Positions 25,329 through 62,737 of a stretch of DNA of 64,000 nt are shown here, one piece after another. The position numbers were made by a program, and so were the translations under genes. Position 1 is the stretch's first letter. Every line of letters begins with the position of its first letter. The stretch is taken from positions 124,001 to 188,000 of IMG/VR virus record IMGVR_UViG_3300023296_000874. The stretch is one strand, 5' to 3'. The notes beneath the pieces were generated by a model. The model saw only the letters and a list, made by a program, of their open reading frames with translations, had not been told where the DNA came from and searched no databases.

Positions 25329-25994
25329 TCAGGCAGCTACAGCAGAAGCGTTCACAGCCTTGACGGATGCGTGCATCTCCATCACCTTGGAGCCAACAGC
25401 CGAAAGCGCGTCGCCGGTCGTCTCGTCGGAGAAGTCAGCGGTCGCAACCACGGAGGCAAGAGCCTTCATGTGCGCGGCAATGGCAGTACGGGCACCGCTT
25501 GAGCGGGACGCCTTCTTGGCCTGCTTGGCAGCAACCTCGTAGCCTTCAATGGCCGAAACCACCTCAGATACGCGGTCAAGGATGTAGGAAACGTGCTGCT
25601 GGTTGTGGTCAGCGTAGACGTTGGTGTGGTCATCCAGAGCGCCCATGGGCACCTCTGCATCACCGGCAACGAGTCCGTCGTCCATGTAGAGGCCCATTGC
25701 CTCTTCCACGCCGCCGAAGTCTTCTACGCCCATACCAACGGGCTCCTCAAGGGCGTCTTCGACGGTCTCCTCGAGCATTCCCACTTCGGGCTGAAGCGGC
25801 TGTGCGGGCTGATGGTCTTCGTCCATACCCCAAAGGCCGTCATCCATGAACGACTCGTAGTCATCCATGGCAACGTCGATGTCGGTGAACAGCTCAGCCT
25901 GACGGGGGGTGGATGCGGTCTTCAGCTCGGAACGCATGGCAGTGATCGCCTGACGAATCTCTGCCGCCTTCTGGTGTCGGATCTGACGGTTCAT
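25329..25994 (-). CDS. Hypothetical late protein (acidic core, helical ends), possible virion internal protein
   Basis: 221 aa. It has its own promoter motif and RBS, and contains ELKTAS. Confidence 0.7.
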   Translation of the reverse strand: MNRQIRHQKAAEIRQAITAMRSELKTASTPRQAELFTDIDVAMDDYESFMDDGLWGMDEDHQPAQPLQPEVGMLEETVEDALEEPVGMGVEDFGGVEEAMGLYMDDGLVAGDAEVPMGALDDHTNVYADHNQQHVSYILDRVSEVVSAIEGYEVAAKQAKKASRSSGARTAIAAHMKALASVVATADFSDETTGDALSAVGSKVMEMHASVKAVNASAVAA

Positions 25995-26000
25995 TACGTG

Positions 26001-26065
26001 TCTCCAGGGTTGGGGATAGATCCAGTCAGGCGCATTGAAGCGCCTTTGACTCGATCCCCTGGAGA
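26001..26065 (-). promoter_or_regulatory. Structured 5' leader hairpin sequestering the RBS of 25329-25994
   Basis: On the minus strand: tctccaggg...agtca..aggcgc-ttcaat-gcgcct.gact...ccctggaga. The GGAGA Shine-Dalgarno sits in the 3' arm. Confidence 0.55.
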
Positions 26066-26080
26066 TACAAATGGAATATG
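26066..26080 (-). promoter_or_regulatory. Candidate late promoter motif, copy 2 (CATATTCCATTTGTA)
   Basis: Consensus match upstream of ATG 25994. Confidence 0.7.
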
Positions 26081-26101
26081 ACGGCGTCTGCCGCAGGAAA
26101 C

Positions 26102-27007
26102 TCAGGCCCTCAGGAAGCTCAGCCCCTCGCGGTACTCGAGGCTCCGGAGCCGGTTGGCTACCTCTTGGTACTCAGGCAGTGTGAAGGTTCGCGGCTCCTG
26201 AAACTCTTGCCAGTTGTCATCCATGCGGTCGATGGGGAGGCACACGGGAGCGGTGTGAGGCCCCCACTCGGAGTCGAGCTCACGGCGGTGGTCGGTGGCG
26301 AAGTACTCGTCGGTTTCCTCGTTGCGCGGGCGGCGCTTGTTGTACTTCGCCCACTGCTCAGGGTCCCCTTGGAAGAGCATCATCTGCCAGCCGCAGTTGT
26401 AGAACTGGATGATGTAGACGTCCTTCTGCTCTCCCCAATCAAAGGGGAAGAAGAAGGCTGCGGCCTCACGGTCCCGCCCGTTGATGATGTAGATGTTGGA
26501 GCACTCCCCAATCTTGAGGCGGCGATTGATCACTTCCCAGGCCATCTGCGCCGGGTGAACCATCATGCTCTCGTGCTTGTAGCGATGCGGTCCGGATTGG
26601 GTGGCGGGAACCCAGGGCTGCTTGTCCTCGAAGAGCATTCCGGTGCTGTAGCCGCGTCCCACTCGGGTGTACATCGGCTTGTCGTCATCATCGGTCTCAG
26701 GCCAGCGGAACAAGCCCTTCTCCCGCTCTTCAGCGGTGCCTACCTCGAGGATGCCGTAGCACGGGTGTTGGATGTGAAGCTCACCGCTGTAGATCTTTTC
26801 GCCTTCAGGTCCGTACTCGAACCCCCTGTCGTCATCACGCTTCGCCTGGAAGCGGAGGTCGTGGCAGCCACGGTTGCAGAACCACTTCACAGCCTCGAGG
26901 AACGCCTCGGCCTTGGTGAACGCCTTGGCGATGTCCGCAGCCCACAGAGCTCCGGCAGCGGCGTCATCAGGATAGTCGATATCGATTCGCGGTGTCTCTT
27001 TGGGCAT
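26102..27007 (-). CDS. Hypothetical protein
   Basis: 301 aa, aromatic-rich globular-looking ORF with GGA RBS. No recognised family. Confidence 0.75.
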   Translation of the reverse strand: MPKETPRIDIDYPDDAAAGALWAADIAKAFTKAEAFLEAVKWFCNRGCHDLRFQAKRDDDRGFEYGPEGEKIYSGELHIQHPCYGILEVGTAEEREKGLFRWPETDDDDKPMYTRVGRGYSTGMLFEDKQPWVPATQSGPHRYKHESMMVHPAQMAWEVINRRLKIGECSNIYIINGRDREAAAFFFPFDWGEQKDVYIIQFYNCGWQMMLFQGDPEQWAKYNKRRPRNEETDEYFATDHRRELDSEWGPHTAPVCLPIDRMDDNWQEFQEPRTFTLPEYQEVANRLRSLEYREGLSFLRA

Positions 27008-27060
27008 GACTGTTCCATCCTTCGGCGGTAGACTGCTCTTATACTGGAGGAACGATCCCT

Positions 27061-28141: not shown

Positions 28142-28336
28142 TCAGTACCTTCGCTGCCGCTTTCGCTGAAGTCTTTCGGTATGCTGACGCATCTGATCAT
28201 AGAACGCGCGGTGGAGACGGTCGAGCTTGTCCTCGATAGAGTCCACCCGGTCCTCAACCGACCGCGCTGCACTCTTGTCCAGCGAGGCTGCAATCCGATC
28301 AGCGAGATCGGATATGCGGTTTTGGATACCGTCCAT
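28142..28336 (-). CDS. Small helical late protein
   Basis: 64 aa, start overlaps the sheath stop. Contains RISDLADRIAAS. Confidence 0.7.
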   Translation of the reverse strand: MDGIQNRISDLADRIAASLDKSAARSVEDRVDSIEDKLDRLHRAFYDQMRQHTERLQRKRQRRY

Positions 28337-31300
28337 CAGCGGCTACGGAGGTTGAAGGTCACCACGATGTAGTTCAGGGGGAACACAGGCACGTAGGCCA
28401 GTTCAACCTGCACGGCGGTCGGGTCCGCTGCATCGGGGGTTGCCTTCACGGCGGTGTAGCTCGTGATGATCTCAGCGGCAATGAGGCTCTTCATTGTGGT
28501 CTTAACCGCGCGCTCGATGTCACCGAGTACGCCGCCAAGGAACTTGATACCAATGAACTGAGAGAGGGTAGAGCGCATCACAAGCTGAACGTGGTCAGAG
28601 ATCGTGATAACGGTCGGCTCCCTCTTCAGGGTGGAGCTCATGTTCGTCGTGAATGCCTGGCGGATGCGGATGTTCGGATCCAGGTCCTCGAGCACGGTGA
28701 TACCGGCTACGGCGGTCTGGTTCTTCTCTACCTCATCCATCTCACGCACGAGGCGCTTGAAGCCAACAATCTGTCGGAAGGTCATGGGCGATGCTACGTC
28801 GTATGCCGTGCTCACGTTGGAGCCCGCAACTGCGGCAGCCAGGAAGGAGCCATCAACGATGTGCTCCGTCTCTACGCCCTGCTCATCCGTCAGCGATACA
28901 ATCGCAGAGTCAGGGTACACAGCCCACAGGCGCTCGTTGGCGTAACCCTGTGCTGCACTCTGAGCGGCGGTAGGAGTGGTACCATCAGCAAATCCGAAGA
29001 TCGTGATGCGCTCCTGACGCCATCGAGGGCTGCTCTGTACGATGCAGTGCGTCTTGCAGAAGGCAATCACCTGCGGCTCGGTCGTCACGGGCATGATGAG
29101 TGCGGGGCGGAACCTGCGCTCAATCGGCTTGCGGAGGCTGTCAATGGCATCGATGTACGATGTCACGGTACCGTCCGTGCCGCCCGTCTCCTTCACAACC
29201 TGCTTTCCGGCAACCAGGAGGGCACCGTTGGCAATCGCAAGGAACATGGCCAGCGTCAGCCGGTTGGTCGGATCCAACGCGCCGTACTCAGCGGTGATGT
29301 CACCGAACTTGGTGAACACCTTGGCGTCGTAGTTCGTCTTCTCGTAGCAGTAGGAGATGTAGTACGTGTCACCGTTGGCGGGCTCGTTTCCGGCCTTGTC
29401 GAAGGTGTCAATGCAAGCGGTGTCGCCCACTCCGATGTCGGCGGTGTTCGCTACCTTCACCTCAGCACCGTGCATCGCGTACACAGGGTTGCTGCTATCC
29501 GTCACGAAGGTCTTGAGCACGCTGAAGCGGATCACGCCTCCGTCGTCGTAGGAGGATGCCTCGGTGGGGAGCAAGAAGCTAATCCGCAGTCCCGTCACTT
29601 CGTCGATGTAGGTCTGTCCCACAACGCCTTCGAAAACGGTGCCGCTACCTGTTCCCGTCGGGTGGCTGATGCTGAAGGCATCGTCCATGAAGGATTCAAC
29701 GGCGAACTGAGCGTATGCGTCTTCCCCGCCATCCGTCTGTCCGGCTTCGAAGCCGAGCAGTGTGTAGGCATCGTTCGCAACCGCGTTCAGGGTCAGAGTC
29801 TCACTCAAGCCCGTTGCGTCAGTAGTGAGGCGCACGCAGTCGCCTTCAACGGTAGCAGTCACATCGCCCAGTGCGAGGTTGATGTCTGCTGCCACGGTGG
29901 TCGCACTCACGGAGCTACCGGTCGTGGTATCGGCATCGAAGCCAAGCTCAGTGTTCGCGGTACCGGAGGCAATCAGGATCAGAGCCGAATCGCCTACGTT
30001 CACGCTGGTCAGTACAACCACGCCACTGTCGTCCGTGGCAACCACTCCAGTGTCGGTCCCAGGTACAACGCCGGTAGAACCGGTGGTGCCCGTAGAGCCG
30101 CTGGAGGTGATGCCCGTTCGAAGTGCGCCGTTGATCTGGTCTGCAACCTCTTCAGCGGTGAGCCCGTTGCCGAGGAAGATCACCTCGGTCAGTGTGCTGC
30201 TCTCATCGCTACGGAGGTAGAAGGTCAGGCCGTCAAGGTCGAAGGTCTGAGTACCAGTACCGGTCACAACTGCGGGTCGCGCCGCCGTCAGGGTGATGGT
30301 AGTTCCATTCACGCTGATGGTGTCGCTCACGCCGTTTTCGAAGGCCCAAGGTCCATCTTCGCCGCAGAACAAGGTCGCGCCGCGAGCAATCTGCTCTTCC
30401 ACTTCAATCTCAACGTACTCTTCAACAGGTACGCCTGAGCCATCGTGGAACATGCCCAGCAGAGTCTGGCTGCCTGTACCCCAGTTCAGGGTCTGGCTAA
30501 TCGCGCTCTTGCTGATGTACTTGGCGTCGTAGATGAAGTCGTTGAGCAGCTCGCTCTCAACCGTGTAGGTACCGGTGCCGGAGGCTCCCGCAACTACGTT
30601 GGTCAGGGTGTAGCAGTCATCAACCAGGAAGTTGGTGAAGTAGGTAGCGAACACACTCTCGTTGGGCTGTACGTCCTCAGCGAGCGTGATGAGCCGGTTG
30701 GCTCCGTCTACCTTGATCACCGTCACCGGGTTGCGGCTCATGGCGTCTACAACATCCTCACCCACGTAGGCGGTGATGAGCTCGGGACGGTCAGTCACAA
30801 GGTCAAGACGCCCATTGGAGATGGCGTTGAAGGTGTCGCTTCCGAGTGTGGTGTCACGCCCGTTGCCCAAGGTGGGCACGTAGGTGAGGCGGAACACGTC
30901 GCTGCTCACTGCCGAGGTAGCGGGGTCCGTGTAGGAAGCGGCGGCATCCAGATACACCTTGGTGTCCACAAGGGTCACGGTGATCTGGGTTTCGTCGAAG
31001 TACTCGGTACCGTCGATGTGAATCACGGAGTTGATTGCGTAGCTGCTTCCCCAGTAGATCAGGGCCGGGCCTGCGCTCTGGTTCTTCACTACGAAGTCAG
31101 TCTCCTCGATGTAGGAGGCATCGCCGGGGGCGAGTCCTACACGGGATACTTCGGTCACATCAGCATCGGGCAGGTAATCGAACGTGTCCTGCCAGGTGTT
31201 GTGGTAGTAGGTCACCAACACAACAGCGCCGGATGCGGGAGCTGCGGCGAGTACGATCTCGCCAGTGCTCCCACTCACGCTGCTCACGGTCACCGCAACG

Positions 31301-31917
31301 CCGTCTACTTCCACAACCACATCAGATGCAGTAGTGGAGGTTACGCCGCCGTTGGTTCCGTCAACAACCGGCACATTGAACACCTTGATGGTGGTCGCGG
31401 TGCCGTCACACTGATCGCTCACGTCGTCCGTGAAGGAAGTGTCGGTACGGTTGAAGTAGTAGGTGCAACGCACGTCGGCAGAAGCACTCGGGAAGCTCTT
31501 CAGCGTCACGAGTCCCAAGGTACCGCTCACTGCGGTAACCTGCACTTCTTCGCCGTCTACGGTGACGGTCACATCTGCTGCGCTGGTCGAGGTCGTACCC
31601 TGCCCATCGCCCTTGACGATTGGGTAGTTCGTTACCTGGAACTGCCGCAGTGCTCCATCTTGTGCTCCAAGGACGGGGCTCTGAGGGTTCGCGAGCGAGG
31701 TTACCCACCGCGCACTCAGATCTTCCTTGGTGATGAGGTTGTCAGAAATCGCCGAGCTGCCGCGAATCATCTCGTAGTCGTCGCGGCACAGCACTTCCTG
31801 CCCTACGCCAATGAAGACGGGAAGGCGAATGGTGTCAATCAGCGTATTGACGGCTGGCTCAAACAGAGTTCGAGTGTACACGCCCGGTGGAACGTAGCTG
31901 GTGAATGGACCCGGCAT
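28336..31917 (-). CDS. Contractile tail sheath protein with large inserted beta domains
   Basis: About 1193 aa. N-terminal YVPPGVYTRT and C-terminal sheath domain (TEPQVIAFCKTHC...ERITIFG...EPTVITISDHV...AYVPVFPLNYIVVTF). Confidence 0.9.
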   Translation of the reverse strand: MPGPFTSYVPPGVYTRTLFEPAVNTLIDTIRLPVFIGVGQEVLCRDDYEMIRGSSAISDNLITKEDLSARWVTSLANPQSPVLGAQDGALRQFQVTNYPIVKGDGQGTTSTSAADVTVTVDGEEVQVTAVSGTLGLVTLKSFPSASADVRCTYYFNRTDTSFTDDVSDQCDGTATTIKVFNVPVVDGTNGGVTSTTASDVVVEVDGVAVTVSSVSGSTGEIVLAAAPASGAVVLVTYYHNTWQDTFDYLPDADVTEVSRVGLAPGDASYIEETDFVVKNQSAGPALIYWGSSYAINSVIHIDGTEYFDETQITVTLVDTKVYLDAAASYTDPATSAVSSDVFRLTYVPTLGNGRDTTLGSDTFNAISNGRLDLVTDRPELITAYVGEDVVDAMSRNPVTVIKVDGANRLITLAEDVQPNESVFATYFTNFLVDDCYTLTNVVAGASGTGTYTVESELLNDFIYDAKYISKSAISQTLNWGTGSQTLLGMFHDGSGVPVEEYVEIEVEEQIARGATLFCGEDGPWAFENGVSDTISVNGTTITLTAARPAVVTGTGTQTFDLDGLTFYLRSDESSTLTEVIFLGNGLTAEEVADQINGALRTGITSSGSTGTTGSTGVVPGTDTGVVATDDSGVVVLTSVNVGDSALILIASGTANTELGFDADTTTGSSVSATTVAADINLALGDVTATVEGDCVRLTTDATGLSETLTLNAVANDAYTLLGFEAGQTDGGEDAYAQFAVESFMDDAFSISHPTGTGSGTVFEGVVGQTYIDEVTGLRISFLLPTEASSYDDGGVIRFSVLKTFVTDSSNPVYAMHGAEVKVANTADIGVGDTACIDTFDKAGNEPANGDTYYISYCYEKTNYDAKVFTKFGDITAEYGALDPTNRLTLAMFLAIANGALLVAGKQVVKETGGTDGTVTSYIDAIDSLRKPIERRFRPALIMPVTTEPQVIAFCKTHCIVQSSPRWRQERITIFGFADGTTPTAAQSAAQGYANERLWAVYPDSAIVSLTDEQGVETEHIVDGSFLAAAVAGSNVSTAYDVASPMTFRQIVGFKRLVREMDEVEKNQTAVAGITVLEDLDPNIRIRQAFTTNMSSTLKREPTVITISDHVQLVMRSTLSQFIGIKFLGGVLGDIERAVKTTMKSLIAAEIITSYTAVKATPDAADPTAVQVELAYVPVFPLNYIVVTFNLRSR

Positions 31918-31987
31918 CAACTGCCTCCGGAGTGGAAAGCTGTGAGACCGCCAATATAGGAGGTCATGATCATCAGCTCCCTCTGAT

Positions 31988-34288: not shown

Positions 34289-35221
34289 TTATTTCTTGGA
34301 GGGCTTCGATCCGTCATCCTTGGGTTCACCCTTCGGTACGGTCTCTGCCTTATCCTCGCCCGGCGTGGGGCTCTTGCCCTTTTCACGCTTGGCGGCGGCT
34401 TCATCTTTCTTAGAGTCGGCCTCGCTTTCCTTTTCCTCACGCTTGCTGTCGGCCTCGGCCTTCAGCTTCGCCGCCATGGCTTCCCAGTCCTTGCGGGTGA
34501 TGTGGCCCTTGTCAGCACCGTCCATCTCTTTGACGTAGTCATTGTAGGAGATGTTGGGTTTCTCACCCAAAACCTTCTCAGCGGTCTCCTCATTCTCTTC
34601 CTGAACCTTGCGCAGGTGTTGGGCAAGCTCCTTGGCTTTCGCGGGTAGACCAGTGATGTACTCGTCTACTTCCACCACGTCAGTGAGAGTCTCGGCTGCG
34701 TCCTCGAGACGCTCCCCAATGTCCTTCTCGTCGTCGTCCTTGTCGCCCAAAATCTCGGAAAGTGCGTCGCGTAGGTCATCCTCGTCGATGTCAACATCGA
34801 TGTCGGCCTCTTCCTTGATGTCCTCTTCCTCAGTCTCGGTGCCCTCGTCATCATCGACGTCAGGGGTCTTGCCTTCAGGGCTATTGGCCTTGTCAGCAAT
34901 GTCCTTCTTGCGTTGGTGCTTTTCGTCGATCTTGTCGATCTTGTCGTCGGTGTTCTTCTTCTTGGCTGCCGAGTCATCTTCATTCCGCGTGGTGGCGCGG
35001 TTGTACTTGTCCCAGAGGCCCTTGATGTAATCGCCCTCGCTCTTCTTGGAGTCTGGGTGCTCCTTCTTGTACTTCTGGTACTGCTTCTTGAACTTGCCGT
35101 CCAGACGCTTCTTCTGAGCATCGGACAGCGCCACGATCAGGCGCGCAATACGGGAGGCGGTACGCGAACGAGGACGTAGCGCAAGGAATCCCAGGCGTAG
35201 TCGGAGCTGAAGCGGTTCCAT
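34289..35221 (-). CDS. Highly charged (D/E/K-rich) largely disordered protein, possible internal/scaffold protein
   Basis: 310 aa dominated by D, E and K. Starts ...RSRTASRIAR..., with a TGATG overlap to the upstream gene. Confidence 0.7.
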   Translation of the reverse strand: MEPLQLRLRLGFLALRPRSRTASRIARLIVALSDAQKKRLDGKFKKQYQKYKKEHPDSKKSEGDYIKGLWDKYNRATTRNEDDSAAKKKNTDDKIDKIDEKHQRKKDIADKANSPEGKTPDVDDDEGTETEEEDIKEEADIDVDIDEDDLRDALSEILGDKDDDEKDIGERLEDAAETLTDVVEVDEYITGLPAKAKELAQHLRKVQEENEETAEKVLGEKPNISYNDYVKEMDGADKGHITRKDWEAMAAKLKAEADSKREEKESEADSKKDEAAAKREKGKSPTPGEDKAETVPKGEPKDDGSKPSKK

Positions 35222-36824: not shown

Positions 36825-36992
36825 CTACTCCTTGGTGTCTTCGTCCTCGTCACCCTTCTCTACTTCCTCGGCGAGGCGGTTGATGTCGGAAGCGAGACGC
36901 TGCGCGGCACTCTTGACCTCAGGCTTGATCTCAAGCTCCTTGGCGATGGTGTCGAGCTCGTTGGAGATACGGTTCAGTGCTGGTGTTGCCAT
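36825..36992 (-). CDS. 55-aa helical protein (not in ORF track)
   Basis: Manual translation: MATPALNRISNELDTIAKELEIKPEVKSAAQRLASDINRLAEEVEKGDEDEDTKE. Preceded by a GGAG RBS. Confidence 0.65.
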   Translation of the reverse strand: MATPALNRISNELDTIAKELEIKPEVKSAAQRLASDINRLAEEVEKGDEDEDTKE

Positions 36993-38417: not shown

Positions 38418-38852
38418 TCAGTTCAGCTCGAAGGCTTCTTCGAGCTTGCCGCTCAGAGGAATGTTCACAAGGGACTCCCTCATGGCTCGGGAGCGGTCCC
38501 AGGGGGACCATGCAAATCGGGCAGTCCCTACGGCGTCCTTGGGAAGTGCAAAGGTCCTCCCGTCGTCACACCGGAAAATCACCATCTTCTCGGCGATCTT
38601 CGTTCCTGATGTCACTCCGAAGGCTTCTTCGAGTGCAGGGGGCGTGGAGACGTTGAACAGTCCGTCCCTTGGAGCACGACGCCGTGTGTACGGGCTGTGC
38701 ATGAAACGGGCCTTGCCGGTCAGCTCGTAGGGGATGAAGAAGACGTGGCCTTCCTCGTCCCTGAAACGAGCCCACTTGTCGGCTGTCTTGACCGTAGCTG
38801 AATGCTCAACCGCCCAGGCCAGCTTGTAGATCTCGCGTGCGAGCTTCTTCAT
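38418..38852 (-). CDS. Hypothetical late protein
   Basis: 144 aa. MKKLAREIYKLAWAVEHSATVKTAD, with a short internal repeat (FRDEEGHVFFIP / FRCDDGRTFALP). Confidence 0.7.
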   Translation of the reverse strand: MKKLAREIYKLAWAVEHSATVKTADKWARFRDEEGHVFFIPYELTGKARFMHSPYTRRRAPRDGLFNVSTPPALEEAFGVTSGTKIAEKMVIFRCDDGRTFALPKDAVGTARFAWSPWDRSRAMRESLVNIPLSGKLEEAFELN

Positions 38853-40230: not shown

Positions 40231-41582
40231 CTCACAATTCGACCGTAGGTCGGGGATCGACCTCGGTCCTGCATACCATCACGCGCTTTCTCTTCGCCTG
40301 TGTTGGTGTTGTCGTTGATCTGTGGGTACACGGTGCCCTCCGCACCGGGCTTACCGAACCCACCGTGCTGGCGGGTTTGAGGGTAGGCCAGGTTGGCGAG
40401 CATCTCAGCATTGGCAGGAACCTTGTACCGGATGTCCTTCTCACCGAAGTAGCCGATCATGAAGTGCTGCTGAAGGATGTTGCCACGGTTGGAGGGAACG
40501 TTCACCGCGCCAATGGAGTAGCGGTCGTTGTTCTGCCGGACAATGAAGTCGCGCTGGCTGACCATCGGGGTGGGTCCAGTCCAAACCTCGTACTGGTGGA
40601 GTACCTGCATCCCGTTCTGAGTCAGCTCAATGCGGCGCTCGCCGTCCTGAGGAGCGATCAGGATGTCGTAGGGTCCCTCGTAGCCACCCTGGATGCTCGT
40701 ACCGAAGCAGTTGAGGCAGTCGTTCTCAGCTTGCTTGTGAACGTCCGAGTAGCAAGCGCACCGCACTCCCACCCACTTCCGGATGAACAGCTTGACGGCC
40801 TCGCCGCCTTGCTCGAGGATCCAGCGGTTGCGCCGAATGCCCTCCTTCCAGATGTAGTCCAACTTCTCAATCTCATGCGCGCTGACGCCCTCTACACCCT
40901 TGAGCGGAGTCTCAATCTGAGCTCCCGTGCCGTCATCTACTACGGTGGTGAGCTTGTAGAAGGTCCGCTGTCCGATCTGCCCCGTGAGGAGCGTCGTGTT
41001 GAAGCGGTAGCTCATAGTCACAACAGAGGAGAGGGTAGGGAGCACAGGCGTCACGAGCTTCCGGGTCACCTTGTCCCAAATGCGGGCCTGGTTGAGGAAT
41101 ACCTCGCCGGTAGCTCCGTTCACGCTGCGCACGGGCACAGCCACTCCGTCGATCTTCACTACCACGTCGGAAGGGACGTTGGCGGGGATCGCTTGGGATC
41201 CTTCCTTTACAATCGGGTTCGGCACCTGGATGATGTAGAGACCTTCAGGGTGGTCAGCGCCTCGAGCCGTCATCATTCCGCTGACGTCTTCGTTCAGTAC
41301 CGCCTGGTTCTGGGTGCTGTCACGGAAGAAGGTGGTTCCGATGGGTACGGTGTTGACCTTGGTGTAGGTCGCCCACTGACTGTCCGAGGATCGGTAGAGG
41401 TTGACGCCAAGCACCGTCCACTTCCCATTCCCCAGGATGAGGGCGGGATTGTCCCAACGCACGTCCATCATCCCCACGTCCGGTGAGGTCACGAACATGT
41501 TCAGGGGTGCGATGGGTGTGCGCGGATCATCGCGCTCTCTTGGGTCGGTCTCCCGACTCAGCCTGTAGGTCTCATTAGGCAA
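40227..41582 (-). CDS. Head-completion / neck protein with FN3-like N-terminus and Cys Zn motif
   Basis: 451 aa. RCAC...DCLNCFGTSIQGGY resembles large-myovirus neck proteins. The segment VRWDNP...GVNLYRS is FN3-like. Confidence 0.6.
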   Translation of the reverse strand: MPNETYRLSRETDPRERDDPRTPIAPLNMFVTSPDVGMMDVRWDNPALILGNGKWTVLGVNLYRSSDSQWATYTKVNTVPIGTTFFRDSTQNQAVLNEDVSGMMTARGADHPEGLYIIQVPNPIVKEGSQAIPANVPSDVVVKIDGVAVPVRSVNGATGEVFLNQARIWDKVTRKLVTPVLPTLSSVVTMSYRFNTTLLTGQIGQRTFYKLTTVVDDGTGAQIETPLKGVEGVSAHEIEKLDYIWKEGIRRNRWILEQGGEAVKLFIRKWVGVRCACYSDVHKQAENDCLNCFGTSIQGGYEGPYDILIAPQDGERRIELTQNGMQVLHQYEVWTGPTPMVSQRDFIVRQNNDRYSIGAVNVPSNRGNILQQHFMIGYFGEKDIRYKVPANAEMLANLAYPQTRQHGGFGKPGAEGTVYPQINDNTNTGEEKARDGMQDRGRSPTYGRIVR

Positions 41583-43547: not shown

Positions 43548-44047
43548 CAGTACTCCACTGTCTTAGACGGCGATTCGTACCGCAACCGGGCTTTCTCAAT
43601 CTCAACCTTCTTGCGGTTCAGATCGCGCCCGTCCGTTGCGAGGATCGGCTGGTTGTCTTCGCTCAGTCCGGCAAAGAGCCAGTCCTTGCCATTGCGGTCC
43701 CGCACTTGGTCGCCGTGCATCAGGACGCGCTTGCGAGGGTCCTCGTGCATCTCACCGAACACGGAGCGCATAGGCATCAGCCCGTACCGCTTGGGTCCGG
43801 AGAGTACAAGGCTCGGAGGGCTTCGTCGTCCTGCCACGGTTGCTCTCCTATCTCGGTGCTTCCACGCGGGCTCGAGGCGGCGGCTGAATGCTCGGAGCTC
43901 GTCCGCAAGCACGCTGCCTTCCTCTACACCGAAGCGAGGGTCCTCAAGGACGCTGATCGCCTGTCCGATGAGCTCGGCGGGGTGGAACTTGTTGAAGCTC
44001 TCACGGTTGAGAGCGGCAAGCCTCTGAATCTCAGTTGATACGGTCAT
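43547..44047 (-). CDS. Hypothetical late protein with STEIQRLAA N-terminus
   Basis: ATG 44047 overlaps the upstream stop (ATGA). Confidence 0.7.
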   Translation of the reverse strand: MTVSTEIQRLAALNRESFNKFHPAELIGQAISVLEDPRFGVEEGSVLADELRAFSRRLEPAWKHRDRRATVAGRRSPPSLVLSGPKRYGLMPMRSVFGEMHEDPRKRVLMHGDQVRDRNGKDWLFAGLSEDNQPILATDGRDLNRKKVEIEKARLRYESPSKTVEY

Positions 44048-46038
44048 TCTGCCCACCTCTGTCGCATACGGCGGGAAGCCGCGTCGGATTGGTCACGCTT
44101 GGCATCACTCATGGAGTGGCGCTTCAGCCAGGTTTCAGCGTTGTCGCGGGCTCCAATGATCTGGCCCCACGTCTGCTTCAGCTCAGCACGTAGCGGTGTG
44201 TCCACCCGGTAGATGCGGCGGTTCTTGGCAATCACCTGGAACCGCTTGATCAGGTCGTGGCTGCGGATCATTGCCCGGAGGTCCTTGAGGCCCTCACCGA
44301 ACTTCTTCGCGTCCTGATCTCGGGAGGCACTCATCATCCTTCCGATGATGCTGTCGTACTCGTTGGCTACCTGAGCCACCACGTACTCGCCCAAGTCCTG
44401 CATCGCCTGCCCATTGGCTACCAGCTTCTGCTCAGCCTTGTTGAGCGCGCCGTTGCGCTTCTTTGCCTGCACCTTCACAACCACTGCGTCACGGGCTTCC
44501 TGGTACTGAGCCAGTACCCCACGTCGGATCTTGAGGTGGTCGTCTGCACGCACTACACGGGCGAGCTTCTGAATCTGACTGGATGTTGTCACCTTGGTAC
44601 TCCCGAAGGCCTCAAAGGCTTTGTAAGCGAACCACCTCTGTAGGCGGGGGAGCGCGTAGGTGTCAAGAGTATCCCTGCCTACCCACTCGAATGCATCGTT
44701 CTCCCAGTCCAGTTCAACCTCACCTGTGAACTTTCGCGAGAGGAAGATGTGGACCGTGTCCTCACCGGGCGAGTTGGCTACGCCGAGTAGCTTGAGCTCC
44801 GTAGGCTTCAGCTTGGTCTCCTCGTAGGCTTCACGCTTGGCGGCTTGTGCGGGGCTCTCACCCTTTTCTACGCCGCCCACAACGAGGGTCCAACTGCCCG
44901 GCATCCATGGAGCCGTAATGCCGCGTCGTACAAGGAGGATCTTGTTGTCGCGCATGAAGCATACGCCTGCGGCCTTGTAGTCGTTCGTGGCTGCATTCTT
45001 GGGGGGTTCTTCAGGCACGGGGCAATCCTTGGGACGTCGGTCGGTGTTGTAGAAGTCGGTCCAGAACACCGAGATGATCGCGAACTCGTTCTTCCTTCGC
45101 CCGCCGCGAAGTACGATGGTCAGCCTGTCCTTGGGGTCTTCCCATACAAGCTTCCTGCCGTACTCCAACTCCTCAGTCACCCGCTTGCCTGCGGGAGTCT
45201 GCATGGACTTCTCACGGTTGAGCCACTTCTGCCAGTTCTTGATGCCGCTCCGGATGTCCTGCACGGTGATGCCGCGCTCATCCATTCGACGCTGGGTGTG
45301 CGGTGTGAGAACGAGCTTGCTGTTGTTCGGTCCGCGTTCAGCCAAGAGGTCATAGACGATCTGCTCGTCCTTGCCATCAAAGTCACGTCCGCCTTCCTCG
45401 ATCTCAGCGATGAGCTGGTCACGTACTCGGGGGTTGCGCACGTTGCGGTAGACGCGCTCAGCCAGGTAGCAAGGTCCAGCCTCGGTGGGCAGTCCCAGTG
45501 AAGGACTGAGGTCAGCCGTCCGGCTCTTGAATGGGAACCGATGTACCTTGCTCATGCCCCACACCTCAAGAACAGGAGAGAACGTCCCAGTCGGCTCGGG
45601 TCCTGTGTAGGGCGCGTCGCCGTCTGAGTAGGAAAGTGTCGCGTGTGGACGGTAGTTCGGGAACCTGTCCGAGATGTCGTAGCCAGCATCCATCAGCTCT
45701 CGCTTGACGGCTTTGCGCAGTGCGCCCATGTCGCGGCTGAAGGCGATGGGCATGTGGTGGATGCTCTGTCCGGAGGGGTTCTTGAACTCGTCCTTGGCTT
45801 GCAGCGTACAGATCACGTCACCGAAGCGTCGTACCTGTCGGGAAACCAGAGCGAGGAACTCCTGCTCACGTTCGGGTGGGACGTTGCCCACGATCAGGAA
45901 GGTGATGTGCGCCGGGGAACGGTCGTTCGGCAGCTTGGGAAACTGGTGGGCGAGCCAGATAGGCATCGGCATGAACAGCCCGACAGACGTATAGTCTCCG
46001 GTCTTGTTCCCGTCCAGTGGTGAGGCATTCTTGATCAT
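44044..46038 (-). CDS. Multidomain protein: 2H phosphoesterase + DUF4258-like domain + Nudix hydrolase + helical C-domain
   Basis: Two HxT motifs (AHITF, PHATL). LVLTPHTQRRMDERGITVQDI is DUF4258-like. Nudix box GGVEKGESPAQAAKREAYEET. Likely start ATG 46038. Confidence 0.8.
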   Translation of the reverse strand: MIKNASPLDGNKTGDYTSVGLFMPMPIWLAHQFPKLPNDRSPAHITFLIVGNVPPEREQEFLALVSRQVRRFGDVICTLQAKDEFKNPSGQSIHHMPIAFSRDMGALRKAVKRELMDAGYDISDRFPNYRPHATLSYSDGDAPYTGPEPTGTFSPVLEVWGMSKVHRFPFKSRTADLSPSLGLPTEAGPCYLAERVYRNVRNPRVRDQLIAEIEEGGRDFDGKDEQIVYDLLAERGPNNSKLVLTPHTQRRMDERGITVQDIRSGIKNWQKWLNREKSMQTPAGKRVTEELEYGRKLVWEDPKDRLTIVLRGGRRKNEFAIISVFWTDFYNTDRRPKDCPVPEEPPKNAATNDYKAAGVCFMRDNKILLVRRGITAPWMPGSWTLVVGGVEKGESPAQAAKREAYEETKLKPTELKLLGVANSPGEDTVHIFLSRKFTGEVELDWENDAFEWVGRDTLDTYALPRLQRWFAYKAFEAFGSTKVTTSSQIQKLARVVRADDHLKIRRGVLAQYQEARDAVVVKVQAKKRNGALNKAEQKLVANGQAMQDLGEYVVAQVANEYDSIIGRMMSASRDQDAKKFGEGLKDLRAMIRSHDLIKRFQVIAKNRRIYRVDTPLRAELKQTWGQIIGARDNAETWLKRHSMSDAKRDQSDAASRRMRQRWAE

Positions 46039-53601: not shown

Positions 53602-53958
53602 ATGAAGCTCGCAGAACTCAAAGCCGCAGCCCACGCACTGACCAATGTGGAAGCACACCTCGGAAGAGGCTGGGACTACATCGGTAGTGCCGGTGGATCT
53701 GAGTACACCTTCGGACTCGACCTTGAGGCCGACGGTGGAGAGTTCCCTGAGGCTCCCGGTGGCAAGTTTGAGCTCGTGCGTGCCAACGGCATCGTGAGTG
53801 CTTGGACCATCCGTTGGTACGCGGAAGGCGAGCACCTGTACACCGAATACGAGGGACGTGGCGACTCCCCCACCAAAGCCTACTACAGCCTCCTCTACAC
53901 CTTCGAAGACTCCGACAGCGCAGAGCTCAACGCATGGGCCGCTGCGGCTGACGAGTAG
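53602..53958 (+). CDS. Hypothetical protein
   Basis: 118 aa with GGAGG RBS. Confidence 0.75.
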   Translation: MKLAELKAAAHALTNVEAHLGRGWDYIGSAGGSEYTFGLDLEADGGEFPEAPGGKFELVRANGIVSAWTIRWYAEGEHLYTEYEGRGDSPTKAYYSLLYTFEDSDSAELNAWAAAADE

Positions 53959-53981
53959 ACCATCCACCAGTAGGAAAGGGA

Positions 53982-57969: not shown

Positions 57970-60435
57970 ATGGACAGCCGATTTGCCACTCGTAACTTCG
58001 GCGGCGCATCTCGCCGCTACTTCTTCGTCGAGGCTTTGGCCTGCGGTTCGACCGACACGGTCGACACCGATACGAACCCCTCCCATCACATCGTCGTGCT
58101 GGACGCCTCCGGCTCCATGTACCGCGACATGGCCTCGATGAAGGCCACCGTGCGCAAGCTCTGGACCCTCGAGGAGTTCCAGAACAGCAACCAGCTCGTG
58201 AGCCTCCTCAGCTACTCTTCGGAGGGCGACCTCCGCACCCACTTCAGCCGCGTGCGCGTAGCTGACGTGATGGCAGCGGACAGCAGCTACCTCAAGGAGA
58301 TCGACAACCTCCGCGTGCGTGGCCTCACCTGCATGAGCCAGGCCCTCGAGGGTGCCCGCCAGCTCTGCCAGACCGGCGAGCTGACCTGCATCACCCTCCA
58401 CTCCGACGGCTACGCCAACCACCGCTCCCCGACTCAGGAGCGCCGCACGATCGACCGCATCATTGGCGACTTCGCCGGTATGCAGGACGTGTACGTCAAC
58501 ACCATCGCTCACCGCGCGTGGAGCGACTTCGGACTGCTCAACAGCATCTCCAACTCCCTGAGTGGCAAGTGCGTGCAGGCGGGTGACATCCGCGCGGTGT
58601 TCGATGCACTCCACGACACGACCACGCTGCTCAGCGGCCAGCGCACCCCGGCAATCGCCCAGCAGATCGGCAACGCCGACTACCAGGTGTTCGTCAGCGT
58701 GGATGACGGCCGAGTGAACGGCACCGACGGTGACCTGCAGGTGACCGGGCTGAGCAACGACGGCGACAAGACCATCTACCGCTACCGCAGCGTCACCGAG
58801 GCCGAGTACAACAGTTCTTCTCTGCCCGAGTGTGGAGAGGGCAACGACGACCTGACCCCGGTGTACGCCTACAGCCGTGCGATGCTGGCCGAGGGTAGCC
58901 TCAACACCGCCAAGTACGCGCTGGTGAGCACCCGCAACGGCACGCTCCTCGACGAGTACAGCCGCGCCCTGACCAACGAGGAGATCGCGGCCTTCAGCAA
59001 CGGCCTCGAGAACGTGCTCTTCAACGACCCCGACCACACCTTCAGCGATGGCTACGGAGTGGACACCTCGGTTGCCCCCGTGCTGAGCATCCTCGGCGTG
59101 CTGGACACTTGGAGCCGGGCACTGCGCCTCGACACCAAGGCTCTGAGCGCTGGCTACAAGCGGCGTGGCCTCAAGCGCGTCGCTGGCAAGCGTCTGGATG
59201 ACGGCTCGCTCGAGCTGCCCTGGATCGACTCCGTGGAGACGGACACCGATGACTTCGCCCAGGTTGGCGCGGTTGAGGTGAACCGCAACACGGCGACGGC
59301 CAACATCCGCGTCGAGCGTTCGATGCAGATCGTTGAGCGGGAGAGCGGCAACGCGATCCTCGACATCAGCGGTGTGGACGTCAGCGACCTGAAGAGCTAC
59401 CGGAACTACACCCTCGTGGGTGACGGCAGCTTGAACGTGAGCGAGATCGTGGTGCAGATCAGCGACAAGCGTGCCTTCCGCGAGTTGGTTGCGCTGGGCG
59501 TGCTGACGGGTGACTACAACCCGACTGCCTCCTACACCATCAGCCTCGCCGGGCGTCCGCTGGTTGCCTTCGACCAGACCTACGCTTCCATCGACGGCGT
59601 GTTCGACACCTTGGCTCAGTACAAGGCGCTCGGCAGCATCCTGACCGCACTGACCGCGACGACCTCCGAGGCGTTGACGGGCGAGCAGGTGACCGAGCTG
59701 AAGCGTCACTACCTGAGCCCGGCGCTCTACCTCAGCCTCCCGACCACCTACGAGTACACGGAGCTCGACGATGCGATGGCGGACGGCAGCGTCGACACCC
59801 GCCTCTCCTACAAGGTGGACATCGGCAACACCGACATCGTGAGCACCGGCAAGCTGAAGAGCGCCAACGCCTACCTGGTGCGCCGCTTCACCGTGGCTCT
59901 GGACAACGTGGCGCAGAAGAAGGGCACCTGGGCGATGTGGTGGGACGACAACTACAGCGTCGGACTCAAGAAGCTGACCGCGCGTACCAAGCTGGACGCC
60001 ACCGACGACATCCTGATGCCGATCTTCGAGGGCTTCCTCGGCTTCGGCAACTCGGCGGCGGTGACCGACATCCTGGTTGCTGCGGGTGCGGATGCGGCCT
60101 TGGTTGCCTCCATCGAAGCTTCGCTGGTGAAGACCAACGAGCCCGAGGAGCAGGTTGAGGCCTTCAACGCTGCCAAGCGTTGCGTGAAGGCGGCTGAGAA
60201 GGCGCTCTTCGCGGACCGCGTGAGCCCCGTGGCCTTCTACATCGGCGCAACCGGCCTCGTGCCGGATGAGTTCGATGCTCCGGCCATGACCGCTGACGAC
60301 CTCGCGGGCAGCTTCCCCAACATCAAGCTCTCCAAGGGCGAGAAGGAGGGGACGTTCTTCCAGGTGGGCAGCAGCCTCATCAGCGTGTTCATCAAGGAAG
60401 AGCGCTTCAGCACGGGGAACCAGGCCACCGCCTGA
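57970..60435 (+). CDS. von Willebrand factor A (vWA) domain protein
   Basis: 821 aa. MIDAS VVLDASGSM, then GLTCMSQAL and LHSDG. The long C-terminal region is unassigned. Confidence 0.85.
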   Translation: MDSRFATRNFGGASRRYFFVEALACGSTDTVDTDTNPSHHIVVLDASGSMYRDMASMKATVRKLWTLEEFQNSNQLVSLLSYSSEGDLRTHFSRVRVADVMAADSSYLKEIDNLRVRGLTCMSQALEGARQLCQTGELTCITLHSDGYANHRSPTQERRTIDRIIGDFAGMQDVYVNTIAHRAWSDFGLLNSISNSLSGKCVQAGDIRAVFDALHDTTTLLSGQRTPAIAQQIGNADYQVFVSVDDGRVNGTDGDLQVTGLSNDGDKTIYRYRSVTEAEYNSSSLPECGEGNDDLTPVYAYSRAMLAEGSLNTAKYALVSTRNGTLLDEYSRALTNEEIAAFSNGLENVLFNDPDHTFSDGYGVDTSVAPVLSILGVLDTWSRALRLDTKALSAGYKRRGLKRVAGKRLDDGSLELPWIDSVETDTDDFAQVGAVEVNRNTATANIRVERSMQIVERESGNAILDISGVDVSDLKSYRNYTLVGDGSLNVSEIVVQISDKRAFRELVALGVLTGDYNPTASYTISLAGRPLVAFDQTYASIDGVFDTLAQYKALGSILTALTATTSEALTGEQVTELKRHYLSPALYLSLPTTYEYTELDDAMADGSVDTRLSYKVDIGNTDIVSTGKLKSANAYLVRRFTVALDNVAQKKGTWAMWWDDNYSVGLKKLTARTKLDATDDILMPIFEGFLGFGNSAAVTDILVAAGADAALVASIEASLVKTNEPEEQVEAFNAAKRCVKAAEKALFADRVSPVAFYIGATGLVPDEFDAPAMTADDLAGSFPNIKLSKGEKEGTFFQVGSSLISVFIKEERFSTGNQATA

Positions 60436-60591: not shown

Positions 60592-61092
60592 ATGCGCGAA
60601 TTGACCATCTACGTCACGGATGACGGGAGGCGGTACGACGACAAGCGTGCCGCTCAAGAGCATGAGGCAGTCGATGCCGCCATGCTCCCTCTCTTGGCGA
60701 TGCTCCCCCCGAAGTACGACATCCCCTACGCGCAGTACATCGACCACGGGCCGTCCGCCTACGTCCGGGGACAGGAAGCTCGCCTTGCCGCCTACACCTA
60801 CCTGCGAGACAACCCGCCGCAGTACAAGAGCATGGACCACGCCCGCATCCCAGAGGTGATCCAGGCGCTCGTTGATGGCAAGGACGTGAACGACGGGTGG
60901 ATCGAACGCTGCATCCTCTACGAGAGCACCCCGTGGGCGAACATGCGTCAGATCTTCAGCCGCCTTGCTTGCATGGACGCGGGTGGGCGGGAGTACGACC
61001 AGCAGTACCACAAGAACAACAGCGAGAAGACCACCGAGCACATCGTCCCCGGTTACAGTCGCAGGCTTGACCTGTTGATGGAGGAAGCATGA
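60592..61092 (+). CDS. Hypothetical protein ending RRLDLLMEEA
   Basis: 166 aa from ATG 60592, with an ATGA overlap to the next gene. Confidence 0.75.
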   Translation: MRELTIYVTDDGRRYDDKRAAQEHEAVDAAMLPLLAMLPPKYDIPYAQYIDHGPSAYVRGQEARLAAYTYLRDNPPQYKSMDHARIPEVIQALVDGKDVNDGWIERCILYESTPWANMRQIFSRLACMDAGGREYDQQYHKNNSEKTTEHIVPGYSRRLDLLMEEA

Positions 61093-61571
61093 AAGAGATC
61101 CGTAGCCCCCATGCAGTGAGCTGGCATGACACCGATGGCCCGACCATCTTCCTCGCTGGCTCCATTGAGGGCGGCAACGCTCCTCCGTGGCAGGCTGAGT
61201 TCGTGGAGCGCTTCAAGGGTGAGCGTGGCACCATCGTCAACCCACGCCGCAAGGACTGGAATCCTGAGCACAGCAAGTACCGCCACCCCGCGCTCATCGC
61301 TCAGATCCAGTGGGAGCTGAAGGCACTCTCCAAGGTGGACCTGATCTTCATGTACTTCGCGCCCGGCACCATCTCCCCCATCTCGCTTCTTGAGCAGGGT
61401 TGGTTCGGATTCCAGCACGGGAAGGAAGGGAACATGATCACCGTCTGCCCGCCCGAGTACTTCCGCGCCACCAACGTAGAAGTGTTCTGCGAGATGGTTG
61501 GCATCGATGTACACCTCGACCTCTGCGAAGGCTACGACGCCGTAGAGGATTGGCTGGAGGCGCGTAGATGA
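61089..61571 (+). CDS. Nucleoside 2-deoxyribosyltransferase-like protein (Nuc_deoxyri_tr2 type)
   Basis: IFLAGSIEGG...WQ...IVNPRRKDW...QIQWE...SPISLLEQG. Confidence 0.85.
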   Translation: MKEIRSPHAVSWHDTDGPTIFLAGSIEGGNAPPWQAEFVERFKGERGTIVNPRRKDWNPEHSKYRHPALIAQIQWELKALSKVDLIFMYFAPGTISPISLLEQGWFGFQHGKEGNMITVCPPEYFRATNVEVFCEMVGIDVHLDLCEGYDAVEDWLEARR

Positions 61572-61936
61572 AGATCCATACCTGGATGCTCGAAGCAGGC
61601 GCGGTGCTCGCCGTGCTTGTGACCGTGGCGCTCTTTAGCGACAAGGGGGCAGTAGAGTGGGTTGGAGTCTATGGCGTCTTCATGAGCTTCCTACACTCCC
61701 AGGTATCTGACCGCCTCGCAGAGAAGGAGGCTCAGAGGTACGACCTCGGCTCCAACATCGATGGACTTGTGGAGTGCTATGCGTGGGAGCGTCGGTACTT
61801 CTACGCCAAGGAGGGCGGCTGGTTCTTCTACTTCATGGCTCTGGAGGCCTGGAGCGCTTTGGTAGGCGTCTTCGTATTCCTTGGCTACCGCATCTGGCGG
61901 AAGTTCTACCGACGATATCGACCCCTTCGCACTTGA
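61568..61936 (+). CDS. Small membrane protein
   Basis: 122 aa with 3-4 hydrophobic segments, coupled to the upstream gene. Confidence 0.7.
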   Translation: MKIHTWMLEAGAVLAVLVTVALFSDKGAVEWVGVYGVFMSFLHSQVSDRLAEKEAQRYDLGSNIDGLVECYAWERRYFYAKEGGWFFYFMALEAWSALVGVFVFLGYRIWRKFYRRYRPLRT

Positions 61937-61992
61937 AGCTGATCTCACCGTTTCTTGACTTGACCCTGAACCCCTTGACCCGGAGCGCACAA

Positions 61993-62301
61993 ATGCGTCG
62001 CCTTCTTCTCCTCGCCTCCCTTTCCTTGCTCGTCGGCTGTTCCAACCTCACCGCTGGTGAAGTGACGGAGGCAGAGACCACGGGTATTGCCCACTGCGAG
62101 AAGCTCCACGCGGGCTCCACCTGCGCCGCTGCCTGTCAGGAGCGGGACACGGATGAGGACGGCTTTGTCCGTTGCAGCCTCACCGCCACGCCTGATGGCT
62201 CCACTGTGGCTCAGGACCTTCCGGCCCTCGAGTGCGCCTACGGCAAGACGTGGAGCTGGGCGAAGGGCTGCCGTCAGCCCAACAAGGCCGTCACGCGCTG
62301 A
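61993..62301 (+). CDS. Small Cys-rich lipoprotein
   Basis: MRRLLLLASLSLLVGC lipobox from ATG 61993, with six further Cys. Confidence 0.75.
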   Translation: MRRLLLLASLSLLVGCSNLTAGEVTEAETTGIAHCEKLHAGSTCAAACQERDTDEDGFVRCSLTATPDGSTVAQDLPALECAYGKTWSWAKGCRQPNKAVTR

Positions 62302-62737
62302 GCACGTTCCGGATGATGCGCTCAATGAAGGGCACCATCTTGTAGCGTTTGAGATCGTCCACACCCACCCAGGCGATTGCGATGTTCTCGTGATCTGTCA
62401 GGCGTGGCTTCCCTCTGTAGCCCTCACTCACGAAGGGATGCAGGATGCCGAGCTCCGGACCCATGTTGATGGACCGGAGCTTTCGCAGTCTTCCGGGTCG
62501 GATCCCAGCTTCCTCAACGAGCTCACGCACCGCGCCTTGCTGTGGCGTTTCTCCGGCATCCACTCCACCGCCCGGTAGGTTCCACGCCAAAGGCATCCAA
62601 GGGGCTGTACCGCCGCGCTGTAGTAGGAGGACCTTGCCGTCTTCCACTACGACAGTGACGGCTGAGTGCTCAAGCTGAACAGCCGCCGCCAGCTTGCGGA
62701 TCTCACTTGATGTGGATGTTTTCTGTGGTGCTGGCAT
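62291..62737 (-). CDS. Nudix hydrolase (MutT-like), late-type gene
   Basis: Nudix box GGGVDAGETPQQGAVRELVEEAGI. Shares TAPWMP with the Nudix domain of 44044-46038. N-terminus SSEIRKLAA. Confidence 0.9.
   Translation of the reverse strand: MPAPQKTSTSSEIRKLAAAVQLEHSAVTVVVEDGKVLLLQRGGTAPWMPLAWNLPGGGVDAGETPQQGAVRELVEEAGIRPGRLRKLRSINMGPELGILHPFVSEGYRGKPRLTDHENIAIAWVGVDDLKRYKMVPFIERIIRNVLSA

What the first reader, a model, noticed from the sequence alone, without database searches (positions are those of the whole stretch)
25329..62737. Recurrent [EQD]-I-x-[KR]-L-A / [KR]-x-A helix in late proteins: candidate capsid-targeting or maturation signal
Seen: SSEIRKLAA (62291 Nudix N-terminus), SSQIQKLAR (inside 44044), STEIQRLAA (43547), AREIYKLAW..VKTA (38418), SDINRLAE (36825), SDLADRIAA (28142), RTASRIAR (34289) and ELKTAS (25329). 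All are minus-strand genes in or directly under the candidate late-promoter block. Established: T4 internal proteins carry a capsid-targeting sequence removed by the prohead protease. Inference: an analogous signal loads cargo enzymes into the head for injection.
Basis: partly seen in the sequence, partly recalled or inferred. Interest (0 to 1): 0.65.

Follow-up and report, generated by a model that had tools for sequence, protein, structure and literature searches.

The report
Shared N-terminal address tag, jumbo phage
Several unrelated proteins of this uncultivated 257-kb phage begin with the same short helix, most likely a label that loads them into the virus particle, though no partner, cleavage or packaging has been shown.

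Summary
The window lies in a 257.5-kb IMG/VR jumbo-phage contig. Genome-wide, [EQD]-I-x-[KR]-L-A occurs 7 times against 0.45 expected. Five hits lie in the first 30 residues (0.04 expected). All seven carry S or A two residues upstream. The refined consensus is [ST]-[SA]-x-[EQD]-I-x-[KR]-L-A-[RA]-x-[VF]. Synonymous codons are fully randomised between copies, and the carriers share no similarity beyond two Nudix domains, so selection acts on the peptide. One (34289) qualifies only through its ortholog. Two (28142, 25329) do not fit. Three more lie outside the window. Orthologs in a related metagenome contig keep the tag at about 40% overall identity. A relative with an 80%-identical capsid protein lacks this tag. 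It carries a longer one, with an alignable core, on at least 11 unrelated proteins. That longer tag matches 3,818 protein clusters and was found in no paper or Pfam family. Carriers include Nudix, 2H-phosphoesterase and ParB/Srx-like domains, which Iyer et al. class as virion-delivered or head-associated. A T4/P1-like encapsidation signal is therefore the best reading (about 0.45). Packaging, partner and cleavage are untested, and the one docking prediction gave no answer.

The parts
62675..62713 (-). Tag of the 148-aa Nudix hydrolase (gene 62291-62737), residues 9-21. The Pfam Nudix match starts at residue 24.
44548..44586 (-). Best-scoring tag copy, at residues 513-525 of the 693-aa 2H / DUF4258 / Nudix protein (gene 44044-46125). 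A GTG at 44590-44592, preceded by GGGAG and 7 nt, could start a separate 182-aa product that would begin with the tag.
44003..44041 (-). Tag of the 165-169-aa protein of unknown function (gene 43547-44056; probable ATG start at 44045-44047). Its ortholog at L036:1720-1923 keeps the tag.
38805..38843 (-). Tag of the 144-aa protein (gene 38418-38852), directly upstream of the actin-like gene. Its ortholog at L036:7035-7592 keeps the tag.
36858..36896 (-). Tag copy in the second helix of a 55-aa protein (gene 36825-36992). This copy is not N-terminal.
35126..35161 (-). Degenerate copy near the start of the 310-aa K/D/E-rich protein (gene 34289-35221). It counts as a member only because the L036 ortholog (10706-11698) begins with a clear copy.
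41544..41582 (-). Tag-like N-terminus of the conserved 451-aa structural protein (gene 40227-41582). It is clearer in the L036 ortholog and absent from the L040 and L034 homologs.
28280..28315 (-). It is not a member: a D-[KR]-[LI]-A-A helix type that is not enriched.
25911..25928 (-). It is not a member. K-[TE]-A-S is the repeat of the scaffold-like protein.

Best explanation
The motif is a portable N-terminal address tag: a capped amphipathic helix of about 12 residues. It docks diverse accessory proteins, enzymes included, onto one common partner of the assembling particle, so that they are built into the virion and probably delivered with the DNA. This is the logic of the T4 capsid-targeting sequence and of the P1 DarB N-terminal signal. 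SHOWN: the motif exists, is enriched, is N-terminal, is constrained at the peptide level, sits on unrelated proteins, is kept in orthologs, and has a counterpart in a related phage. INFERRED: that the partner is a head-assembly protein, that the carriers end up in the particle, and that the tag may be removed afterwards.
For: Enrichment and N-terminal position. Selection at the peptide level: the same-codon fraction is 0.412 against 0.412 expected (codons shown). The carriers are unrelated apart from two Nudix domains. Orthologs at about 38-43% identity keep the tag. Carrier domains: Nudix, and 2H + DUF4258 + Nudix on one chain. The Nudix regions also match a PHROG of portal proteins. One carrier outside the window has an invariant D-G-H-H-R and only ParB/Srx folds at the top of the structure searches. 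Iyer et al. [quoted passage not shown] The carriers A-G have no counterpart in LR745208 or Tunturi_5, like the poorly conserved T4 internal proteins. LR745208 (capsid protein 80% identical) has a tag of about 27 residues on at least 11 proteins with no similarity beyond it; 10 of them were compared. One of these genes lies between the scaffold and capsid genes. Homologs of the ParB/Srx-like carrier keep 50-67% identity in the core but swap N-terminal tags by lineage, and each tag recurs on neighbouring genes. Precedents: PMC9026906 and PMC9024508.
Against: There is no virion proteome, no isolate and no binding evidence; the single docking prediction gave no answer. Tag-like N-termini also occur on a conserved 451-aa protein whose Tunturi_5 homolog is annotated as a minor tail protein, so the target need not be the head. 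Two copies are not N-terminal (the 55-aa protein and g115275). Location in structural-gene blocks is not significant (p = 0.06). The capsid protein is 80% identical to that of LR745208, which uses a different tag; this argues against the capsid protein as receptor. No protease-site consensus follows the tag.
Confidence: 0.45

Rival explanations
1. The helix docks its carriers onto a common partner that is not the capsid interior. Candidates are the neck or tail, the phage actin-like filament, a chaperone or a replication factor.
For: Four copies lie in the neck/tail gene block, and one gene sits directly upstream of the actin-like gene, an adjacency kept in L036 and L037. The 451-aa structural protein has a tag-like start.
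Against: The B-homolog locus with the longer tag that was read (L040, +/-10 kb) shows no actin-like gene. LR745208 has the actin-like gene but not this tag. The carrier domains are those linked to virion delivery or head association in other phages.
Confidence: 0.25
2. The conserved part is mainly a cleavage site for the head maturation protease ([SA]-x-E, then Ile), as in phiKZ and SPN3US, rather than a targeting element.
For: S or A stands at the P3-equivalent position in 7 of 7 copies, with an acidic or amide residue at the P1-equivalent position. SPN3US gp245 cuts after A-x-E. A head maturation protease homolog is encoded.
Against: The P1-equivalent residue is Q or D in 3 of 7 copies. The best-conserved residues (I, K/R, L, A) lie after the supposed cut and form an amphipathic face. 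The longer tag in the relative has no such site at that position. The scaffold-like protein repeats K-E-A-S, a different motif.
Confidence: 0.1
3. The tags bind each other, so that single-tag proteins co-assemble with multi-tag, highly charged proteins that act as hubs.
For: Among the top 149 carriers of the longer tag, 108 have two or more copies. The copies sit at the N-terminus, internally and at the C-terminus, separated by K/E/D-rich linkers.
Against: No multi-tag protein was found in this genome. Tag-tag contact is untested. The two multi-tag hits looked up sat on contigs too short to place them in a module.
Confidence: 0.12
4. There is no shared function: a generic helix-start sequence recurs by chance or by composition.
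For: S/T followed by E/Q/D, then I, L, A and K are all common at helix starts. The motif was defined after it had been seen.
Against: Two real proteomes of similar or larger size give no or one hit at the score that eight copies reach here. There is a strong N-terminal bias. The tag is conserved in orthologs.
Confidence: 0.03

Closest known systems
T4 capsid targeting sequence (CTS) of the internal proteins
   Same: Both are short N-terminal peptides shared by proteins with divergent mature parts. In both cases the carriers are poorly conserved among related phages. In T4 the CTS is sufficient to load foreign proteins (PMC9026906).
   Different: The T4 CTS is the first 10 residues and is cut off by gp21. 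Here the tag starts 2-10 residues after Met, and no cleavage site or cleavage is shown. No sequence relation to the T4 CTS was seen.
P1 DarB N-terminal packaging signal
   Same: In P1 the N-terminal 30 residues direct a large anti-restriction enzyme, and a reporter, into the head. P1 also packages the ParB-like DdrB (PMC9024508; PMC5512222).
   Different: The P1 Dar proteins show no shared consensus. Here a sharp consensus is shared by at least 7 proteins.
Phage polyvalent proteins and portal/MuF fusions (Iyer et al. 2017)
   Same: The enzyme repertoire overlaps (2H, ParB-like, RNase-like), as does the position next to virion genes. The relative Tunturi_5 has 1,262-1,489-aa proteins annotated as Nudix hydrolases beside portal and minor head genes.
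   Different: In those proteins delivery is thought to come from covalent fusion or a large carrier. Here small separate proteins carry a common tag.
Encapsulation peptides of bacterial microcompartments and cargo-loading peptides of encapsulins
   Same: They share a working principle: a short terminal peptide, helical in microcompartments, tethers diverse enzymes to the inside of a protein shell. This rests on my own knowledge and was not tested here.
   Different: The shells and sequences differ. In encapsulins the peptide is usually C-terminal.
phiKZ / SPN3US prohead protease sites (S/A/G-x-E; A-x-E)
   Same: S or A stands at -2 and E at 0, directly before the conserved Ile (for SPN3US).
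   Different: Q or D replaces E in 3 of 7 copies, and conservation continues well past the supposed cut.

Membership tests
T4-type capsid targeting sequence | A short peptide at the extreme N-terminus, shared by otherwise unrelated proteins. | tested here: met
   Five of 7 strict copies lie within the first 30 residues. There is no similarity beyond the tag except between the two Nudix domains.
T4-type capsid targeting sequence | The carriers are incorporated into the head, and the peptide is sufficient for this. | not testable with these tools
   There is no isolate or proteome. The docking prediction gave no answer.
T4-type capsid targeting sequence | The peptide is removed by the prohead protease at a defined site. 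| tested here: inconclusive
   A protease homolog is present. A Glu lies 4-7 residues after the L-A pair in the copies of 62291, 38418, 43547, 36825 and carrier B (read), but it follows no consensus.
T4-type capsid targeting sequence | The carriers are accessory proteins, poorly conserved between related phages. | tested here: met
   Carriers A-G have no tblastn counterpart in LR745208 or Tunturi_5, apart from one partial Nudix match.
phiKZ/SPN3US-type protease cleavage motif | [SAG]-x-E with strict Glu at P1. | tested here: not met
   P3 is S or A in 7 of 7 copies, but P1 is E in only 4 of 7, with Q or D in the rest.
Clade-wide two-helix tag (LR745208 type) | A match to the profile built from 13 N-termini (alignment A3). 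| tested here: not met
   LR745208 gives 11 hits at E 1e-14 to 1e-18. This genome gives none below E 0.5. The best is the C-terminus of g8571-8885, a hybrid of both tag types. The core S-x-[IL]-x-[KR]-L-A-[HRA] aligns by eye only.
Phage polyvalent protein (for gene 44044-46125) | Several conflict-related domains on one chain, encoded beside virion genes. | tested here: met
   The protein has 2_5_RNA_ligase2, DUF4258 (weak) and NUDIX matches. It lies in the neck/tail block, where a Tunturi_5 protein annotated as a 1,362-aa Nudix hydrolase sits.
ParB/Srx superfamily (for the carrier at genome 201220-201990) | ParB/Srx fold with the conserved active-site Arg motif. | tested here: inconclusive
   D-G-H-H-R is invariant in 35 homologs. 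The model has pLDDT 94. The top matches are all ParB, Noc, sulfiredoxin or SerK, but only at Z 4.2-5.7 and Foldseek E 5e-3. There is no Pfam or PDB sequence hit.

The most novel reading that the evidence does not exclude
A large clade of uncultivated jumbo phages (over 1,800 capsid-protein clusters at about 78% identity or more) uses portable terminal helix tags as an address code for what goes into the particle. The common form is a two-helix tag of about 27 residues, found on 3,818 protein clusters and repeated in highly charged, scaffold-like proteins. This phage's lineage has switched to a shorter one-helix form. Tag and receptor would then co-evolve, and the tag alone would predict the packaged, injected proteome from sequence.
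Probability: 0.25. Interest if true: 0.8.

Novelty: new variant of a known kind. Interest (0 to 1): 0.62.

Why it matters
If the tag is an encapsidation signal, the set of proteins that a huge uncultivated phage clade carries into its host could be read from sequence alone. Likely anti-defence enzymes (Nudix, 2H phosphoesterase, ParB-like) would be among them. The signal is compact and sequence-defined, so it could be tested with reporter fusions. It would also give a natural case of a targeting code that differs between close relatives. No Pfam family matched the tagged proteins scanned, and no paper in the searched library contains the four motif strings tried.

Tried and rejected
Complex prediction with capsid protein, scaffold-like protein and tag peptide gave no answer. 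It counts neither for nor against binding.

Searches that found nothing useful:
- Megablast against phage records gave no match.
- Pattern scans of IMG/VR with the 43547 and 38418 proteins found no relatives.
- A word search with the 43547 protein found only itself, although tblastn later found a 43%-identical ortholog in L036.
- A motif-string search of the paper library gave no hit.
- tblastn of the longer tag against 50,697 phage records hit only LR745208, so no isolate with a virion proteome is available.
- Pfam and PHROGs scans of the tagged LR745208 proteins and of ten long multi-tag proteins returned almost nothing.

Approaches that did not work:
- BLOSUM clustering of N-terminal windows was dominated by Cys-rich zinc-ribbon starts and was uninformative.
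- The record behind L043 is not held, so the ParB-like ortholog in the closest capsid relatives could not be read.
- The contigs of two multi-tag proteins were too short to place them in a module.

Ideas dropped:
- A second variant, D-[KR]-[LI]-A-A, has 3 copies here and 2-3 in each relative, so it is not enriched.
- A DNA-level element or recent duplication is ruled out by randomised synonymous codons.
- Tunturi_5 has neither tag type.
Full report
CONTEXT. The window is bases 124001-188000 of a 257,533-bp IMG/VR virus record, with CheckV completeness 81%. No phage record matched by megablast. By protein similarity the nearest records are the uncultured 485-kb phage LR745208 and the Acidobacteriota jumbo phage Tunturi_5 (PMC11924767). 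Bases 1 to about 46000 of the window are a minus-strand tail, baseplate and neck block. It holds a sheath (28336-31920), a baseplate hub, a tape-measure-like protein and an exonuclease. It also holds an actin-like protein, with Pfam Volactin at E 1.7e-64. The head module lies outside the window. It comprises the capsid protein (genome 217567-218460), an acidic scaffold-like protein of 417 aa and the maturation protease. The portal and the large terminase lie there too.

- Genome-wide, [EQD]-I-x-[KR]-L-A occurs 7 times in about 81,000 residues. Within-protein shuffles give 0.45 (maximum 3 in 200).
- Five of the seven lie in the first 30 residues, against 0.04 expected.
- Six of the seven also have V or F seven residues after the Ile. 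The refined consensus is therefore [ST]-[SA]-x-[EQD]-I-x-[KR]-L-A-[RA]-x-[VF].
- Two of the seven are outside the window (genome 9261-10091 and 201220-201990).
- A position matrix scores the seven at 15-26 bits when each is left out in turn. An eighth copy (genome 115275-115949, residue 51) scores 17.9. The best scores elsewhere are about 14 in shuffled proteomes, 13.9 in Tunturi_5 (87,000 aa) and 16.4 in LR745208 (142,000 aa).
- The N-terminal bias alone gives p = 3e-4 here and is absent from both relatives.

34289 is degenerate and qualifies only by orthology. The helix type of 28142 is not enriched. The K-T-A-S of 25329 belongs to a different repeat.

WHAT KIND OF CONSERVATION IS IT? Where two copies share a residue, they share the codon in 41.2% of cases. 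That is exactly the 41.2% expected from codon usage (codons). This is therefore a peptide under selection, not a DNA element or a recent duplication. The carriers show no similarity to one another, apart from the Nudix domains of 62291 and 44044.

The internal copy in 44044 is preceded by GGGAG, 7 nt and a GTG. A separate 182-aa product that starts with the tag is therefore possible.

CONSERVATION ELSEWHERE. Two JGI metagenome contigs (L036 and L037) are 66% identical in the 451-aa protein and are syntenic with the window.
- In L036 the ortholog of 43547 is 43% identical and begins with a clear copy.
- The ortholog of 38418 is 38% identical and keeps the tag.
- The ortholog of the charged 310-aa protein (34289) begins with a canonical copy.
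- The 451-aa ortholog has a tag-like start.

In contrast, carriers A-G have no counterpart in LR745208 or Tunturi_5.

A CLADE-WIDE PHENOMENON. The carrier at genome 201220-201990 has 405 homologs at 50-67% identity. Their cores are conserved, with an invariant D-G-H-H-R. Their N-terminal extensions differ by lineage and fall into a few recurring helix types. In three other contigs, the local type recurs on neighbouring genes (L040, L039 and L042).

LR745208 has a capsid protein 80.6% identical to this phage's. It carries a tag of about 27 residues: helix, N-P, helix, usually ending in K-E-A. The tag is on at least 11 proteins, nearly all at the very start. No similarity was detected beyond the tag among the 10 compared. 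One of these genes lies between the scaffold and capsid genes. Codons are again largely randomised (0.42 against 0.28 expected).

The first helix of that tag, S-K-L-I-R-L-A-H, aligns with the window motif, and the L036 copies look intermediate. One protein here (genome 8571-8885) ends with a hybrid of both. However, the profile of the long tag finds nothing significant in this genome. Common origin is therefore plausible but not shown.

A profile search of 1.84 billion representatives finds the long tag in 3,818 clusters (398 at E of 1e-10 or better). Among the best 149, the tag pattern finds 87 N-terminal, 42 C-terminal and 129 internal copies. In 108 of them there are two or more copies, separated by K/E/D-rich linkers. 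No Pfam family matched the tagged proteins scanned, and no paper in the library contains the motif strings tried. Only LR745208 among 50,697 phage records carries the tag.

WHAT DO THE CARRIERS DO?
- 62291 is a minimal Nudix enzyme whose Pfam match starts right after the tag.
- 44044 combines a 2H phosphoesterase, a weak DUF4258 match and a Nudix domain. The Nudix parts also hit a PHROG of portal proteins.
- The 256-aa carrier outside the window folds with pLDDT 94. Only ParB/Srx-type structures top its fold searches, at modest scores.
- Iyer et al. [quoted passage not shown] They place these beside virion genes and note that P1 DdrB is found in the head.
- Tunturi_5 encodes three proteins of 1,262-1,489 aa annotated as Nudix hydrolases, beside portal, minor-head and connector genes. 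It also encodes proteins annotated as DarB-like and ADP-ribosyltransferase.

MECHANISM. The best reading is an encapsidation or virion-incorporation tag. A capped amphipathic helix docks the carriers to a common assembly partner, as the 10-residue T4 CTS does (PMC9026906) and as the N-terminal 30 residues of P1 DarB do (PMC9024508).
- The receptor is unknown. The fast-evolving scaffold-like protein fits the lineage-specific tags better than the capsid protein, which is 80% identical to that of a phage with a different tag. This is inference only.
- Cleavage is unproven. [SA]-x-E before the Ile recalls the SPN3US and phiKZ sites, but Q or D replaces E in three copies.
- K-[TE]-A-S is repeated six times in the scaffold-like protein. 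Related K-x-A-S strings often precede internal copies of the long tag. This hints at a maturation site, but that too is inference.

The one complex prediction gave no answer and counts neither way. The rivals are a non-capsid partner, a pure protease site, tag-tag assembly and chance. They are weighed in their own sections.

VERDICT. A longer N-terminal tag, whose core aligns with it, is widespread among related huge phages. The capsid-targeting reading is the best available but rests on analogy and on the nature of the carriers.

Noticed in passing
window 37350-38399 (-): An actin-like gene (Pfam Volactin, E 1.7e-64) sits inside the neck/tail gene block. It is translationally coupled to a 112-aa gene downstream. 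It is conserved in L023, L036 and L037 (68-75% identity) and in LR745208 (48%).
   Followed up: partly
genome 219189-220442 (-), outside the window (L013:5189-6442): An acidic 417-aa scaffold-like protein lies between the protease and capsid genes. It has four K-E-A-S and two K-T-A-S repeats. The ortholog in L043 keeps two K-E-A-S copies. These may be maturation cleavage sites.
   Followed up: partly
LR745208 (L024-L033), e.g. L031:48171-48575: At least 11 proteins with no detected similarity to each other start with the same tag of about 27 residues (helix, N-P, helix). The same tag matches 3,818 protein clusters in public data and was found in no Pfam family or paper searched.
   Followed up: partly
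L042:10001-12187: Three adjacent genes begin with a third shared N-terminal helix type. Two are paralogs of the ParB-like family, and the third looks different downstream.
   Followed up: no
genome 217567-218460 (L013:3567-4460): The capsid protein is unusually conserved. The word search finds 1,830 proteins at E of 1e-10 or better. The 120 listed are 77-95% identical, on contigs up to 473 kb.
   Followed up: no
window 38418-38852 (-): After its tag, the 144-aa carrier consists of two repeats of roughly 55 residues with a shared A-R-F-x-x-S-P-[YW] core. No family was found for it.
   Followed up: no
window 36825-36992 and 28142-28336 (-); L036:15308-15604: Small helical proteins share an N-R-I-S-type first helix. 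They look like paralogs placed on either side of the sheath region.
   Followed up: no
genome about 224600-225160 (-): My gene call missed a 160-170-aa ORF, because a weak opposite-strand ORF took its place. It is the ortholog of L043:3446-3931 in the head module.
   Followed up: partly
genome 8571-8885 (+), L002: The C-terminus of this 104-aa protein combines the window-type first helix with a second helix like that of the long tag. The gene is next to tagged gene 9261-10091.
   Followed up: partly
window 46000-54000 and 58000-60000: Coding switches to the plus strand, with higher G+C (0.62-0.65) and reversed AT skew. The region includes an ABC-transporter-like ATPase gene (49974-50795). The tagged Nudix gene at 62291 is a lone minus-strand gene among plus-strand genes.
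   Followed up: no
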